A stretch of DNA of 62,988 bases, counting the filler, from Olpidium bornovanus S191 (Eukaryota > Fungi > Olpidiomycota): assembly GCA_017911155.1 (NCBI GenBank). It is 26 parts of 26 records of this genome, joined end to end, with 100 filler letters (N's around TTAATTAATTAA, not from the genome) between each part and the next. Parts side by side here need not be neighbours in the genome. Positions count along the whole stretch, not along the records: positions 48,113 to 52,901 come from JAEFCI010010255.1; 25 more parts are not named here. One strand, written 5' to 3'. The notes under the pieces were generated by a model, which was not told where the DNA came from, did not search any database, and was given only the letters and a program-made list of their open reading frames with translations. This document shows, in pieces, positions 48,113 to 53,019 of this stretch. Position 1 is the first letter of the stretch; the number at the start of each line of letters is the position of its first letter. Both the position numbers and the translations under genes were made by a program.

Positions 48113-51100
48113 CATGACCACGTTGCACTCGCGGATTCTCGACCTGATGACGTCGCGGCCGGCGCTGGTGACCAGCGGGCAGCCGGTTATGTCCAGCAGC
48201 TCGAGCTTCGGCGCCATCCGGGCCAGGTAAGTGGCGACGGCGTCGGTCAGCCGCCTGCAGTGGCGGAGCTTTAGTCTCTGCAGCCCCTTGATGCTTTCCG
48301 CAAAGAACGCAATCGCCGAGTCGGTCACAAACGAACAGTGGGAAAGGTCGAGCGATTGGTACGCTTTTGCGTGGCCGTAAGAACGTGTTCCATGTCAGCG
48401 CGGGTGGGGGGTGGGGGGGATGGGGGAGGGGGGGAAACCAAAGCGGGCGAAACGGACGCGCGGCGGTACGGCAGGCGGGGGAGTGGTGAAAATGGGGGAG
48501 GCCGGGAGAGAGTGTCACCTTGCGCGCCCAGAGACAAGTCGTACAGGCCCCCGTTAGTGATGTGGTTGCAAAAAGTCAGGTTTAAGTTTTTCAAGTCTAT
48601 GCGCGCGCGCACGTCGGCGGGCAGGAAGAACACGGCGAATCAATTCGGGAAGTGAAAATGTCAACAAGAAGGAAACGCCTCTCCTTCCTCCCCTCTCGCC
48701 GGCCCCCCCCCCCTTTTCCCTTCCCCCACACCTCCCTCGCCTTCCCCGCCTCCCCCGCCCCGGGAACCGCATAGACCCACGTGTGCAAGAGCCCGCTATC
48801 CACTGCAGGCATTTATCTGAGATCCCGTGGCAGTCGGTGAGATCGAGCGTCTCGATCGCCCGGCAGTGCTTCGCCACCAGATACAGGCCGAAATCCGTGA
48901 TCCGCGTGCACCGACGCAGCCGGATGATTTTAATGGCAGACGCCCTCTCGAAGACGTTCTCCAGGCCGTCGTCCCCGATCAGCTTGCAGTAAGACAGGTC
49001 TAACGACCGCAAACGGACCATGCAGTGCCTGTCGAAGGCGGCGGACGTGATCTGGCCCGAATAGGCGATGTCGAGCTTCAGCAACCTCCCGCACTGGCGC
49101 GCCACGAACCCGATCCCGACGTCCGTCAACTTCCAGCAGTTCGACGCAACCACGGACTCCAGGGACGGGCAGCGCGAGGCCAGGACGGTGATGTCCGCGT
49201 CGTGCAGCATCCAGCAGCCGCTGATGTTGACGTGCACCAGCGACTGCCCCGCCCGAGCCGTCAGCTGGTCCAGCACCTTGGGCGTCAGGTAGTCCGTCAT
49301 GCGGTCGTAGCCGAAGTCGAGGTGCCGCCAGGCCTGCGGGGCGTAGGTCAACCGCCTGGTGTAGTTGCAGACCAGGCCGAACCGCGCACGGTCCCGGGGG
49401 TTCAGGAACCAGGATATGTACAGCACCGCCTCGGCGTCGAGCTCCAGGAGGTTCTGGCAGCGCCGGGTTCTCGGCGTCGCGACGGACGCCTCGGCCTTCG
49501 CGAGAGACTTGTCATGTTTGGACGAGGCAGAGGGGCGCACCTTGCCGTTTCCACCGAAAAAATTTCCGATAGCTTTCTTGAGCCCTCGCTTGAACTTTTT
49601 TTTTTTTTTTTTTTTTTCGCGGGAGGTGGGGAAAGGCCGTCACGGGTGGGTGCAAGATGCAGATTAGTTATTTCCTTTTTTTATTTTTTTTCTTCAAAAT
49701 AAAACAACCCGCACACACTCTCTTTCTCGTTATACTAACCGACTTTTTTTTCGGTCCGGGCTTCCCCTGGGCGGCGGCGGAGGGGAACATCGGATTCTTG
49801 TCGTCCTTCCTGGCGACGTCGAACGTGGAGTGCGACTCGCGGGTCTTCTCCCTCTCGCCTTTGCCCCTGAAGAAGAGCCAGAGCGGGTTCGGGTTCTTTG
49901 CGGGCAGCACGGGGGTCACGGCGAGCACGCCCGAGTCGGCATCGGACGCTCGGGGCGGCGCCCTGCCGCCGCTGCCGGTGCTGCTGCCCTGCGAGATGGA
50001 CGCGCCGGACGATTTCTGCGAGATCTTGGATGGCCTCCGGGGGGACCTCCTCGAAGACCCGGCCGATTCGCCGCCGCTGCCGCATCCTGCGGGGATGACG
50101 ACCTCGTTGGAGTCCTCGCTGGGGGCGGGCTGGTCCTTGTTCGCCCGGTCGTTCATCAGCTGCAGCCGGTTCTGCGCAGCGAGGGATATGGTGGTGTAGA
50201 GGTCCGGGTACTCCTTCAGAGCCGCGACCAGCGCCTCTTTCGAGAGAATCACCAGGTGGCATGTCTCCGTCGACACTCGGATGGATGCCGTCCGAGGAAT
50301 CCGGTAATGGATCCCCACCTGCAAAGTTGAACGGATGGGCGGAGATTGGTTATGCGAAACCGAATTGAATGATATGAGAGGGCGAGAGAGAGGGCGACAG
50401 AGAGAGTGGGGGGGGGGGGGGGGGGGAGAAAGGGGGGGGAGAAAGAGAGAGAGAGAGCGAGAGAGAGAAAGGGACTTCCGTCTAGAACGAACGAAATCGA
50501 AATAGGCTGAAAAGAAAAGAAATATCGGTACTGGAAATAAGCGGAAACAAAATCGGCCCTTACCTCACCGAAGAACGACCCTTCGCCGATGTTGTCGTAG
50601 ACCGTCCGTCCGTCTTCCGAGACCACGTCGATCGCCCCGTGGACAATAAAAAACATCTCCGACGAAACCTCTCCCCTCCGGATGACGTAATCCCCTTTCC
50701 TGCATCCCCGGATCGACGTGTACGCGGCAAGCTGCTTGAGGAAAGGGGTCGGGCAGTCTTTAAACAGTGCGACCTTCTTCAGGCGTTCCGCCGTGGCTTC
50801 CACGTCGTACGCCGCCTGCTTCCCGGCGACGGAGGCGCAGGCGGCGGAGCCCAGCTGCTGCTGCTGTTTGCCGGCCTCGACGTTGTCCAGCACTTTTTTC
50901 AGCTTCGCTTCCCGCAGCGTGACCTGCGCGTAGTTCTCGGCCGCCTTTTTCCTGACCGCCTCTTCGATCCGCGGTTCGGATTTCAGGATGCGGTCCAGGT
51001 CGGCCTTCGCGAGCTCGAAGTACGCGAGTTCCCCGCGGGCGCGGACCGACGCGGTCCGCGGGACGTCGTAGAAGAGGGCGATCTCGCCGAGGAAACCCCC

Positions 51101-52750
51101 CGGGGAGATCTGGGCGTACACCGTCTTCCCGTCGTCAGACACGACCTCCGCGGACCCTATCGCGACGATGAGCATGGCGTGCCCCGGCTCCCCTTTCCGG
51201 ATAACGTACTCGCCGTCGGAAGCGGCCTTCAGCTCGAGGGCGAGGGACATCTCCTGCAGCATGCCGTCGTCGCAGTCCTTCAGGAGGGGAACGGCCTTCA
51301 GCTGCTCACGCAGGACGTCGACGTCCGACTCCACGGCCGCCGACGCCGCGGCCGCCATGGCCGTCCTCGACGATATTGTTTCGAGGCGGGACTTTGCCTC
51401 CGCTTGGATCTTGGCGGCGATGTCCTGCCACCCTTTCAGCACCTCTTCCATGTCGGCGCGCGTCAGCTTGAAAACGTCCAGGACGGAGCTGGCCGCGCGG
51501 ACGGAGGCGGTCCTCTCCATATTAAAGAGAACGCCGACTTCCCCGAAGAACGATCCCGTTTGAATGGTGGCGAACGGGTGCCGCTCGTCGCGGCCGTACA
51601 CTTCCGCGGCCCCTCGCGCGACAAAATACATTTCGGCAGACGTTTCTCCCATGCAGACGACGTCCTCTCCGAGGAGATACTGCTCCGGAATTAATTTCAG
51701 CGCCAAGAGGTGCAAGAACTCTGTATCGCACCCTTTGAACAACGGGACCTAGGGCGAGAAACCCGCAAAAAAAAAAAACGGTTTTGACAACAATTTCTCC
51801 CAAGTTTTCGCGGAGCAATTCTCTCTTTCTCTCTCTCTCTCCCCTTTTCTTTCAACTTTTTTTTTTTTGGGTGGGGAGGGTATGTTTGTTACGCACGCTT
51901 CGAAGGTCTTCGTACGTGATGCCGACCCGAGCTTCGTCCGGAAAATTCACGTTGACGTTTTTGGCGGCCTGCTTCTCGAAAACCGCCAGCCTCTCTTCCG
52001 CGACCAGCTTGATCGCCGCGGAGACCGAGGGGTAGTCTTCCGCGATCTCGGCGAACTTCGCCTTGGTCAGCGCGAGGATGAGGCACTTGCCCCTCGCCCG
52101 GCAGGTGGCGGTGCGGGCGATGTCGAAGAGGAGGCCGATCTCCCCGAAGAAGGTGTCCTGCTGCATGACGTTGACGATGGTCTCCCCGTCTTCCGAGACG
52201 ACCTCCACCTCGCCGCGGGCGACGAAGAACAGAGCGCGGCCCACCTCGCCCTTGCGGATGACGGTCTCGCGGTCGTTGATGATGCGCGGCTGGAGGGCGG
52301 ACACCATCCGGGATATGAACCCCTCGTCGGCGAGGGCTTTGAATATCGGGTGGTTCCGCAGGAACTGCTTCATGCCCTCGCCGCCGCTGCCCTCGGCCTC
52401 CTTCGCGATGGAAGTCGACGACCGGAAAGCGTGCCCGTCCTTCGTGGGCGCGGGGCCCGACACGGCGTTCTCCGCTTGCGGGATGCTTTTGGCCGGCCGG
52501 CATTTTCGCTTCGTGAAGGCCGACTGGCTGAGAGCAAAAGGGCGGAAGCGAGGGCGTAGGTTGCCCGTTAAGACGTCAGTTCGGTCTGCCCGGGGGGAAG
52601 GGGGGAGGGCAAGCGGGGTGGGGGTGGGAGTGAAGGTGAATGGAGCAAGCGAACGAGCTTACGGAGTAAGATTGCTGTTGCTGACGGACGACGACCGGCC
52701 GTTATAAGGCAGCTGGGTGACCGCGGGCGCGCTGGGAGCGAACACTGTTT
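48113..52750 (-). CDS. Protein with four cyclic-nucleotide-binding domains, an F-box and Cys-containing LRRs; ends reach contig limits
   Basis: Spliced exons: about 52527-51897, 51748-50564, 50318-49740, 49540-48781, 48596-48519 and 48363-48113, plus upstream exons. Four phosphate-binding cassettes: FFGEIGLLFDIARTAT, FFGEVGVLFNMERTAS, FLGEIALFYDVPRTAS, FFGEVGIHYRIPRTAS. F-box LLELDAEAVLYISWFLNPRDRARFGLVC..., then 10 or more LRRs (L..LDLS.C..I.D). Confidence 0.9.
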
Positions 52751-53019
52751 CTTGATTGACAATCATCGATGCTCCACAGCCCATGCGGAGGGGGAAGAGA
52801 GGGGAAGGGGGGGGAAAGGGAGGAAAGGTTCTTTTTTTCTATGTGCGTGCGTGTGTGCTTATCTCCCGCAACCTAAAAAGAAAAAAATTCCGCGGTCCTA
52901 ANNNNNNNNNNNNNNNNNNNNNNNNNNNNNNNNNNNNNNNNNNNNTTAATTAATTAANNNNNNNNNNNNNNNNNNNNNNNNNNNNNNNNNNNNNNNNNNN
53001 NAAAAAAAAAACTCGTAAA

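What the first reader, a model, noticed from the sequence alone, without database searches (positions are those of the whole stretch)
48113..52750. Candidate cyclic-nucleotide-gated ubiquitin ligase receptor: 4xCNB + F-box + LRR
Seen: after removing canonical introns, one ORF carries four tandem cyclic-nucleotide-binding domains, a disordered linker, an F-box and a long LRR_CC solenoid like FBXL substrate receptors. Every phosphate-binding cassette keeps the Gly-Glu and Arg that bind the ribose and cyclic phosphate. Established: the residue after the Arg is Thr in cGMP-activated PKG and in CNG/HCN channels but Ala in PKA. Here all four read R-T-A, compatible with cGMP binding. cGMP signalling is known to drive zoospore phototaxis in Blastocladiella (CyclOp). 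Inference: an SCF adaptor whose substrate binding or stability is switched directly by a second messenger, analogous to auxin/TIR1, and so a kinase-independent cNMP-to-proteolysis pathway. I recall CNB-F-box-LRR proteins with fewer CNB domains being annotated in other fungi, but I know of no functional characterisation. The four-domain version may be a zoosporic-lineage form.
Basis: partly seen in the sequence, partly recalled or inferred. Interest (0 to 1): 0.78.

Follow-up and report, generated by a model that had tools for sequence, protein, structure and literature searches.

The report
Four-cNMP-domain F-box/LRR protein of Olpidium
This is a real, expressed gene of the root-parasitic fungus Olpidium bornovanus that joins four cyclic-nucleotide sensor domains to a ubiquitin-ligase substrate-receptor module; the family is widespread in swimming-spore fungi and related to Aspergillus FbxA, but nobody has tested whether the nucleotide actually switches the ligase.

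Summary
The minus strand carries a 7-exon gene of at least 1220 codons, cut at the piece's 3' edge. It encodes four cNMP_binding domains, each with a Gly-Glu...Arg-Thr-Ala cassette, then a ~190-residue disordered linker, an F-box and about 11 FBXL-type LRRs. A single 3951-nt spliced contig, and contigs from a second study, join all exons exactly at the predicted GT..AG introns, so the CNB and F-box/LRR parts are one mRNA.

The piece is the 4789-bp Olpidium bornovanus contig encoding KAG5457335.1 (hypothetical, partial). That deposited model lacks exon 1, exon 6 and 8 residues.

The 4xCNB-F-box-LRR architecture is conserved in more than 30 zoosporic fungi, and each CNB position forms its own clade. 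Terrestrial fungi have a 2-CNB relative that includes A. nidulans FbxA/Fbx19. FbxA has been recovered with SkpA/CulA and has xylanase and catabolite-repression phenotypes.

The cGMP inference is not supported. R-T-A also occurs in SthK (cAMP-activated, own knowledge) and in the Ascomycota homologs, and the CyclOp guanylyl-cyclase system is reported absent from O. bornovanus. The Olpidium F-box is divergent (sub-threshold in Pfam, Leu-Asp for Leu-Pro). Gating of the ligase by cNMP remains an untested inference.

Verdict: new variant of a known kind, moderately interesting.

The parts
52785..52901 (-). 5' UTR (visible part)
   Evidence: The RNA contig covers it and runs 29 nt further. There is no upstream ATG, and an in-frame stop precedes the ATG.
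52663..52784 (-). Exon 1. It holds the start codon and the N-terminus MGCGASM, a myristoylation/palmitoylation-like motif. This exon is absent from the deposited model.
   Evidence: (joint 52663/52527).
51897..52527 (-). Exon 2. It holds an N-terminal low-complexity region and CNB1 (domain at about 51987-52373; cassette FFGEIGLLFDIARTA).
51383..51917 (-). CNB2. It spans intron 2 (51749-51896). Cassette FFGEVGVLFNMERTA.
50930..51313 (-). CNB3, within exon 3 (51748-50564). Cassette FLGEIALFYDVPRTA.
50163..50794 (-). CNB4. It is split by intron 3 (50319-50563) inside the cassette: FFGE | VGIHYRIPRTA.
49454..50162 (-). Disordered Ser/Gly/Lys/Arg-rich linker. It covers the end of exon 4, intron 4 (49595-49739) and the start of exon 5. 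It includes SSRRSPRRPS, which the deposited model dropped.
   Evidence: conservation about 0.1; pLDDT about 30.
49313..49453 (-). Divergent F-box (NLLELDAEAVLYISWFLNPRDRARFGLVCNYTRRLTYAPQAWRHLDF).
   Evidence: Pfam is sub-threshold. The FBXL2/FBXL17 alignments run through it. The family F-box profile hits FBXL17 at 1e-9 and Skp2 at 1.5e-8. On its own it gives only E 0.066 or worse. AF2 predicts three helices.
48113..49312 (-). FBXL-type (cysteine-containing) LRR solenoid of about 11 repeats, in exon 5 (to 48781), exon 6 (48596-48519) and exon 7 (48363-48113). It is cut by the piece's edge.
   Evidence: FBXL2-SKP1, TM 0.63.

Best explanation
This is the Olpidium bornovanus member of a conserved zoosporic-fungal protein family. 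The family has four tandem, position-specific cyclic-nucleotide-binding domains, a long disordered linker, and an F-box followed by an FBXL-type LRR solenoid.

Shown here: the gene is real, it is spliced as one mRNA, and the architecture and the nucleotide-contacting cassette residues are conserved across Chytridiomycota, Monoblepharidomycetes and Olpidium.

Inferred:
(1) The F-box docks the protein onto Skp1-Cul1, so it acts as an SCF substrate receptor whose LRR face binds the substrate.
(2) All four CNB domains bind a cyclic nucleotide. cAMP is more likely than cGMP in this organism.
(3) As in PKA-R, PKG and Epac, the ligand-free CNB array holds something in check. My committed guess is that it docks in cis on the F-box/LRR module, or on the linker. 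Nucleotide binding would then move the B/C-helix lids and release the receptor, giving a kinase-independent route from cNMP to ubiquitylation. The direction of the switch (activation or inhibition) is unknown.
For: Gene and transcript. One 3951-nt contig spans all exons, and a second study bridges CNB4-linker-F-box.

Domains. The deposited model of the same contig is P0001, with 4 cNMP_binding stretches at 6e-65.

Family: the same 4xCNB+F-box+LRR architecture occurs in Borealophlyctis, Zopfochytrium, Quaeritorhiza, Thoreauomyces, Globomyces, Gonapodya, Lobulomyces, Rhizophlyctis, Spizellomyces, Polyrhizophydium, B. dendrobatidis, Synchytrium and others. CNB1-4 are each monophyletic with 95-100 support.

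Ligand competence: the cassette Arg positions R157, R308, R460 and R633, together with the G-E pairs, are among the few invariant or at least 90% conserved columns.

SCF role: FBXL2 at 9e-36. The F-box-only family profile hits only F-box proteins solved with Skp1. Foldseek gives TM 0.63 to FBXL2-SKP1 and 0.58 to FBXL17-SKP1. Orthologs pass the Pfam F-box cut-offs. The 2-CNB relative FbxA/Fbx19 was recovered with SkpA/CulA (PMC9744329).

Autoinhibition analogy: the best structural match of the CNB array is the four-CNB regulatory array of Plasmodium PKG (7e-31). Long helices follow each CNB.
Against: No tool here measures nucleotide binding, Skp1 binding or gating.

The Olpidium F-box is below the Pfam cut-offs. 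It has Leu-Asp in place of the canonical Leu-Pro and Thr in place of the conserved Trp. On its own it is not significantly similar to solved F-boxes (E 0.066).

The CNB array and the F-box are separated by an unconserved, predicted-disordered linker of about 160-190 residues, whose length varies from about 80 to 270 residues among orthologs. Rigid allosteric coupling is therefore unlikely, and cis-docking is pure inference.

The AF2 pTM is 0.37, and no inter-domain confidence was available.

The passages found for the published FbxA work report no cAMP dependence.
Confidence: 0.55

Rival explanations
1. The protein is an SCF receptor, but the CNB array is not an allosteric gate. It is a second binding or targeting module. 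For example, it could hold a partner in a cNMP-dependent way, as PKA regulatory subunits hold catalytic subunits, and deliver that partner to the SCF. Alternatively it could control localisation or oligomerisation while the LRR works constitutively.
For: A long, unconserved, disordered linker separates the two modules. The closest CNB relatives include PKA-R and PKG tandem domains that act through protein-protein contacts. The Olpidium N-terminus has an acylation-like MGCGAS motif, which suggests membrane targeting.
Against: No partner is known. The MGC motif is not seen in orthologs, including the transcript-derived sister P0002. No PKA-like inhibitor or pseudosubstrate site is conserved ahead of CNB1.
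Confidence: 0.25
2. In the Olpidium lineage the F-box has decayed. The protein would then no longer assemble into an SCF and would act as a cNMP-regulated LRR scaffold independent of ubiquitylation.
For: The Olpidium F-box is sub-threshold in Pfam and not significant alone against the PDB. Olpidium and its sister P0002 both lack the conserved Trp, and both lack the Leu-Pro.
Against: All six weak PDB hits are F-box proteins, aligned in register. AF2 predicts the three helices at pLDDT about 84-88. Most chytrid orthologs also lack Leu-Pro yet pass the Pfam cut-offs. The segment is retained in frame and in position.
Confidence: 0.12
3. The CNB domains are structural relics that no longer bind cyclic nucleotides, as in the cAMP-independent PKA regulatory subunits of trypanosomes.
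For: Nucleotide binding was not measured. CNB folds that bind other ligands exist in the PDB hit list (T. brucei and T. cruzi PKA-R).
Against: The Gly-Glu and Arg of every cassette, plus the Thr/Ser-Ala that follows, are conserved in all four positions across more than 20 species. This pattern is expected only if the phosphate-ribose contacts are under selection.
Confidence: 0.06
4. The architecture is an assembly or annotation artefact that fuses two neighbouring genes.
For: The source is a metagenome-derived, fragmented assembly, and the deposited model is partial and imperfect.
Against: One spliced contig spans everything, and a second study bridges the junction. The same architecture appears in more than 30 independent genomes.
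Confidence: 0.02

Closest known systems
Aspergillus nidulans FbxA (= Fbx19) and its Dikarya/Mortierellomycota relatives (2 x cNMP_binding + PF16643 cNMPbd_u2 + F-box + LRR)
   Same: The order is collinear: CNB, unstructured linker, F-box, cysteine-type LRR. BLASTP of P0001 against FbxA aligns the CNB pair (7e-29 and 8e-27) and the F-box/LRR part (1e-17). Dissophora's first CNB is sister to the CNB1 clade. The cassettes also read R-T-A. FbxA/Fbx19 was recovered with SkpA/CulA and is nuclear (PMC9744329). Its deletion lowers xylanase secretion and disturbs catabolite repression (PMC8359064, PMC5468973, PMC6838226).
   Different: FbxA has two CNB domains, not four. It has a Pfam-defined cNMPbd_u2 linker that is not detected here. 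Identity is only 22-32%. Orthology as opposed to paralogy is not settled. No test of cNMP binding by FbxA was found.
Zoosporic-fungal 4xCNB-F-box-LRR proteins already in databases (e.g. B. dendrobatidis and Polyrhizophydium 'SCF ubiquitin ligase complex subunit'; Clydaea and Rhizophlyctis 'Cyclic nucleotide-binding domain-containing protein')
   Same: The architecture and the four orthologous CNB positions are the same, with 31-48% identity over nearly the full length. This is the family to which the gene belongs.
   Different: Olpidium and its sister P0002 have the most divergent F-box. Olpidium has an MGCGAS start that is not seen in the others. I found no paper describing this family.
Metazoan FBXL2/FBXL20 and FBXL17 (SCF substrate receptors solved with SKP1)
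   Same: The F-box plus LRR_CC solenoid matches at 9e-36 and 4e-26 by sequence and at TM 0.63 and 0.58 by fold.
   Different: These proteins have no CNB domains, and they carry canonical Leu-Pro F-boxes.
Apicomplexan cGMP-dependent protein kinase (PKG), four tandem CNB domains
   Same: It is the only solved proteins with a four-CNB array, and it is the best structural match (7e-31 over about 620 columns). In PKG the array autoinhibits a C-terminal effector domain (established knowledge).
   Different: The effector in PKG is a kinase, joined without a long disordered linker. One PKG CNB is degenerate (own knowledge), whereas all four look competent here. Identity is about 16%, so this is an analogy and not membership.
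Plant hormone-gated F-box/LRR receptors TIR1 and COI1
   Same: The concept is the same: a small molecule controls an F-box/LRR substrate receptor. There is weak LRR similarity to COI1 (2.6e-4).
   Different: In TIR1 and COI1 the ligand sits in a pocket on the LRR itself and glues the substrate. Here the presumed ligand sites are in separate N-terminal domains. The resemblance is in possible function only.

Membership tests
cNMP_binding (PF00027) domain | Profile match above Pfam's curated cut-off | tested here: met
   Exon 2 scores 66.8 bits and exon 3 scores 137.8 bits, against a cut-off of 27.5. P0001 gives four stretches at 215.7 bits. A local HMM finds four complete domains.
cNMP_binding (PF00027) domain | Phosphate-binding cassette with Gly-Glu and Arg | tested here: met
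   All four cassettes read G-E...R-T-A. The Arg is invariant or at least 90% conserved in the family.
cNMP_binding (PF00027) domain | Actual binding of cAMP or cGMP | not testable with these tools
   This needs ITC or fluorescence binding on recombinant domains.
cGMP-selective CNB domains (PKG/CNG type) | Sequence determinants that discriminate cGMP from cAMP | tested here: inconclusive
   Thr after the Arg is shared with SthK, which is cAMP-activated (own knowledge), and with the Ascomycota homologs. CyclOp guanylyl cyclase is reported absent from O. bornovanus (PMC9616733).
F-box proteins (SCF substrate receptors) | F-box motif recognised at curated threshold | tested here: inconclusive
   Olpidium alone scores F-box-like 21.4 (cut-off 24.3) and F-box 16.8 (cut-off 20.5), and E 0.066 against the PDB. 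At family level the profile hits FBXL17 at 1e-9 and Skp2 at 1.5e-8, and orthologs pass the cut-offs.
F-box proteins (SCF substrate receptors) | Binding to Skp1 | not testable with these tools
   The evidence is indirect only: the relative FbxA/Fbx19 was recovered with SkpA/CulA (PMC9744329).
FBXL class (F-box + cysteine-containing LRR) | LRR_CC solenoid directly C-terminal to the F-box | tested here: met
   FBXL2 at 9.4e-36 and FBXL17 at 4e-26. AF2 gives 10 regular beta/alpha repeats at pLDDT 84-96. Foldseek TM is 0.63. Atlas feature score is 0.97 to the FBXL20 cluster.
Zoosporic-fungal 4xCNB-F-box-LRR family | Four CNB domains, each orthologous to the same position in other members, followed by F-box and LRR | tested here: met
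   In the domain tree CNB1-4 are each one clade with 95-100 support, and Olpidium falls inside each. Full-length profile score is 1347 bits.
FbxA/Fbx19 family of terrestrial fungi | Two CNB domains | tested here: not met
   There are four here. FbxA, Oleoguttula and Dissophora have two.
FbxA/Fbx19 family of terrestrial fungi | PF16643 cNMPbd_u2 linker | tested here: not met
   No PF16643 hit in exon 4, exon 5 or P0001. It is present in the Aspergillus and Oleoguttula proteins.
FbxA/Fbx19 family of terrestrial fungi | Collinear homology over CNB pair, F-box and LRR | tested here: met
TIR1/COI1-type ligand-gated F-box receptors | Ligand pocket formed by the LRR domain | not tested
   Only marginal LRR similarity (COI1 2.6e-4). 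Here the presumed ligand sites are in separate CNB domains.

The most novel reading that the evidence does not exclude
Fungi possess a direct, kinase-independent path from a cyclic nucleotide to ubiquitylation. In this reading the CNB array of this protein family (four domains in zoosporic fungi, two in FbxA of moulds) binds cAMP or cGMP and thereby switches an SCF substrate receptor on or off. That would make it the first second-messenger-gated F-box protein outside the plant hormone receptors. It would also give a molecular reading of how FbxA ties carbon sensing to catabolite repression.
Probability: 0.35. Interest if true: 0.8.

Novelty: new variant of a known kind. Interest (0 to 1): 0.5.

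Why it matters
Cyclic nucleotides are known to act through kinases, exchange factors, channels and transcription factors. A ubiquitin-ligase receptor read out directly by cNMP would be a further effector class.

The family is conserved from chytrids, including the amphibian pathogens Batrachochytrium, to Aspergillus. Its mould member already has carbon-regulation phenotypes and an SCF association, so the idea is directly testable in tractable organisms such as A. nidulans and Spizellomyces punctatus.

The four-to-two CNB difference coincides with the split between zoosporic and terrestrial fungi. Olpidium, the closest flagellated relative of the terrestrial fungi, keeps the four-domain form.

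The work also corrects the deposited gene model by adding exon 1, exon 6 and 8 residues.

Tried and rejected
1. Raw RNA-seq runs X19 and X13 carry the same species label as the holders, yet 0 reads laid in about 6% of each run. This is no test of expression, because the organism may not be present in those runs. The spliced evidence comes from Logan contigs of runs whose RNA status is a guess, although intron-less joints at GT..AG sites show they are transcript-derived.

3. Four literature searches for CNB + F-box in fungi, cNMPbd_u2 or PF16643 found nothing relevant. The FbxA link came only from a protein name. The primary FbxA paper (pmid 22142781) is not held. Assis 2018 does not mention Fbx19.

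4. The long top hits of the representative search (P0003, P0006, P0008, P0009, P0013, P0014) are unrelated multi-LRR proteins.

5. The plus-strand ORFs of 180-351 aa have no Pfam match and are antisense shadows of a GC-rich gene.

6. The full-length AF2 run gave no usable inter-domain information (pTM 0.37), so the cis-docking idea could not be tested.

The deposited model P0001, which lacks exon 1, exon 6 and 8 residues, served as the full-length proxy.

8. Absence from Blastocladiomycota and Neocallimastigomycota rests on word-prefiltered searches of 8000 candidates and is weak.


Full report
**What is in the sequence**

The piece 48113-52901 carries one gene on the minus strand. From the raw sequence and the ORF list I placed seven exons: 52784-52663, 52527-51897, 51748-50564, 50318-49740, 49594-48781, 48596-48519 and 48363-48113. 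They are separated by six GT..AG introns, and the frame stays continuous over 3660 nt, i.e. 1220 codons. The last exon has no stop codon and is cut by the piece's edge. The first ATG follows an in-frame stop, and no ATG lies upstream in the visible 5' UTR.

**Transcript evidence**

Laying public runs on the piece gave one 3951-nt contig in X1 (depth 53). It contains all seven exons joined exactly at the predicted boundaries. The joints are 52663/52527, 51897/51748, 50564/50318, 48781/48596 and 48519/48363.

The exon 4/5 junction falls in a poly-T tract that the tool skipped. The contig has exactly the 8 letters there that my acceptor at 49594 predicts.

The contig runs 29 nt beyond 52901 and 145 nt beyond 48113. 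Contigs of a second study (X4) bridge exons 3-4-5 and exons 5-7.

Two raw RNA-seq runs with the same species label gave no reads at all. That is no test, because the organism may be absent from them.

**Domains**

Pfam finds:
- cNMP_binding once in exon 2 (1.8e-18);
- cNMP_binding three times in exon 3 (1.2e-40), where the third stretch is the N-half of CNB4 and is completed in exon 4;
- LRR_6/LRR_4 plus a sub-threshold F-box in exon 5 (F-box-like 21.4 bits against a cut-off of 24.3; F-box 16.8 against 20.5);
- LRRs in exon 7.

The four cassettes read FFGEIGLLFDIARTA, FFGEVGVLFNMERTA, FLGEIALFYDVPRTA and FFGE|VGIHYRIPRTA.

Exon 5 matches FBXL2 at 9.4e-36 and FBXL17 at 4e-26, with alignments that run through the F-box. 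By language-model features it sits with the FBXL20, FBXL15, EBF, COI1 and Skp2 clusters (0.94-0.97).

**Identity**

The representative search with exon 5 returned P0001, which is KAG5457335.1, 'MAG: hypothetical protein BJ554DRAFT_2684, partial [Olpidium bornovanus]'. It lies on a contig of 4789 bp, which is exactly the length of this piece. Exons 2 and 3 are exact substrings of P0001, and nearly all of exons 5 and 7 are too. The piece is therefore that contig.

The deposited model starts inside intron 1 (no exon 1), skips exon 6 (one LRR), and drops 8 residues (SSRRSPRR) from exon 4. The RNA contig keeps all of these.

**Family**

Sixteen of the seventeen long hits whose F-box lies at residue 600-950 carry cNMP_binding, mostly four stretches, plus LRRs and in most cases a detectable F-box. 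A word search with P0001 and a profile search with the 22-sequence alignment A2 extend the family. It reaches Rhizophlyctidales, Spizellomycetales, Rhizophydiales (including B. dendrobatidis and B. salamandrivorans), Chytridiales, Cladochytriales, Polychytriales, Lobulomycetales, Synchytriales, Gonapodya and Olpidium.

Sources call these proteins 'hypothetical', 'Cyclic nucleotide-binding domain-containing protein' or 'SCF ubiquitin ligase complex subunit'.

A maximum-likelihood tree of 59 CNB domains puts each of CNB1, CNB2, CNB3 and CNB4 in its own clade with 95-100 support, and Olpidium falls inside each. The four-domain array is therefore ancient and position-specific. It is not a recent expansion.

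No member was seen in Blastocladiomycota or Neocallimastigomycota. That absence rests on word-prefiltered searches and is weak.

**Relatives in terrestrial fungi**

Dissophora (Mortierellomycota), Aspergillus and Oleoguttula have two CNBs, an F-box and LRRs. In Ascomycota the linker between them is the Pfam family PF16643 'cNMPbd_u2'.

More than 1400 such proteins exist. Among them is 'protein fbxA [Aspergillus nidulans FGSC A4]'.

The alignments are collinear over the CNB pair and the F-box/LRR part. Dissophora's first CNB is sister to the CNB1 clade.

The literature on this relative says:
- FbxA equals Fbx19. [quoted passage not shown]
- fbxA deletion reduces xylanase secretion and impairs catabolite repression (PMC8359064 and PMC5468973, citing Colabardini 2012).
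- N. crassa Fbx-19 is phosphorylated, and its deletion is allyl-alcohol sensitive (PMC6838226).

None of the passages found mentions the CNB domains or a test of cAMP binding.

**Is the F-box real?**

Most family members, including this one, lack the canonical Leu-Pro. Olpidium and its sister P0002 also lack the conserved Trp of 'VCxxW'.

A profile of only the 51-column F-box segment hits solved F-box proteins almost exclusively. The hits are FBXL17 1e-9, Skp2 1.5e-8, FBXL5, FBXL3, FBXW7, FBH1, beta-TrCP and Cdc4.

The Olpidium segment on its own reaches only E 0.066, although all six of its hits are F-boxes aligned in register.

AF2 predicts three helices there at pLDDT about 84-88, followed by ten regular beta/alpha repeats at 84-96. 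Foldseek matches FBXL2-SKP1 (TM 0.63) and FBXL17-SKP1 (0.58).

I read this as a genuine but divergent F-box. Skp1 binding by the Olpidium protein is inferred, not shown.

**Are the CNB domains ligand-competent, and for which nucleotide?**

Only 25 invariant and 52 nearly invariant columns exist in the 1152-position alignment. They include the cassette Arg of all four domains (R157, R308, R460, R633), several G-E pairs and T-A. That argues for selection on the ribose-phosphate contacts in all four sites.

The cGMP reading does not hold up:
- The closest solved CNB by sequence is SthK, whose cassette is ...PRTATVRA. SthK is a cAMP-activated channel (own knowledge).
- The Ascomycota homologs also read R-T-A, and those fungi are not known to use cGMP (own knowledge).
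- PMC9616733 reports that the CyclOp rhodopsin-guanylyl cyclase and the BeCNG1 channel were not found in O. bornovanus or B. dendrobatidis. Both have this protein.
- Blastocladiella, where CyclOp works, yielded only a CNG channel in the profile search.

cAMP is the more economical guess. Only binding assays can decide.

**How it most likely works**

Shown: one polypeptide with four apparently competent CNB domains and an FBXL-type module, conserved for several hundred million years (a rough figure from my own knowledge of fungal divergence dates, not measured here).

Inferred from the family's relatives and from established CNB mechanics (PKA-R, PKG, Epac): the ligand-free array restrains an effector, and nucleotide binding releases it. 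The best structural match of the array is the four-CNB regulatory array of Plasmodium PKG (7e-31), which autoinhibits a C-terminal domain.

Several results argue against tight coupling:
- The linker is about 160-190 residues long, with alignment identity about 0.1 and occupancy about 0.5.
- The linker has pLDDT about 30, and its length varies among orthologs.
- The AF2 pTM was 0.37, and no inter-domain confidence was available.

I therefore commit to 'cNMP-regulated SCF substrate receptor, probably by release of a cis-inhibitory contact' at roughly 0.35-0.4 for the gating step. The main rival is that the array is a separate partner-binding or targeting module.

**Novelty**

The gene is already deposited as a hypothetical protein. 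Its architecture is catalogued in many genomes, and a two-CNB relative has a name, phenotypes and an SCF association. I found no description of the four-CNB zoosporic form in the literature, and no test of nucleotide gating.

I rate it a new variant of a known kind. Interest is moderate, and would be high if gating were shown.

Noticed in passing
window 52663-52784 (minus), exon 1: The transcript-supported N-terminus reads MGCGASM. This fits the N-myristoylation pattern (Gly2, Ser6) with a Cys3 that could be palmitoylated, as in G-alpha and Src-family proteins. It is absent from the deposited model and is not seen in the annotated N-termini of orthologs, including the transcript-derived sister P0002.
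   Followed up: partly
window 48519-48596 (exon 6) and about 50034-50057 within exon 4: The deposited model KAG5457335.1 skips exon 6 (one 26-residue LRR). It also removes 8 residues (SSRRSPRR, which holds two RRxS-like kinase motifs) from the linker. The RNA contig keeps both.
   Followed up: yes
beyond window 48113; orthologs P0002, P0007, P0152, P0154, P0158 C-termini: Orthologs share a tail of about 50-100 residues after the last LRR. It has a recurring motif (roughly V..D.P...RG....P....P[KR]A.EV....F.SGP) that matches no Pfam family I saw. In Olpidium it lies past the piece's edge.
   Followed up: no
window 49961, 49988, 50839, 52707 and about 48595: There are single-base differences between the RNA contigs of both studies and the window. 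At least the one at 49961 changes a linker residue (Ala to Ser). These are presumably strain polymorphisms.
   Followed up: partly
window 48380-48480, 48690-48770, 49587-49628, 50382-50477, 51816-51853 (introns): The introns are packed with homopolymer and purine or pyrimidine tracts (G-runs, GA repeats, a 26-nt T-run next to the exon 5 acceptor). The read-laying tool skipped three of them as repeats.
   Followed up: no
P0002 (Logan, 4659-nt contig): This is an unnamed, apparently transcript-derived protein of 1267 aa. It is 48% identical over the full length and is sister to Olpidium in all four CNB clades. It is probably from another Olpidium-like organism in a public run.
   Followed up: partly
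P0321 Irineochytrium (1708 aa), P0316 Dinochytrium (2316 aa), P0157 Polyrhizophydium (1560 aa): Some chytrid entries fuse the 4xCNB-F-box-LRR architecture to further domains (a protein kinase; many WD40-type families). These may be gene-model fusions or real variants.
   Followed up: no
PDB hit 9ya0_MA: The best solved-structure sequence match to exon 3 is Toxoplasma PCR12 (TGME49_219070), a 2736-residue protein with tandem CNB domains (1.4e-29).
   Followed up: no
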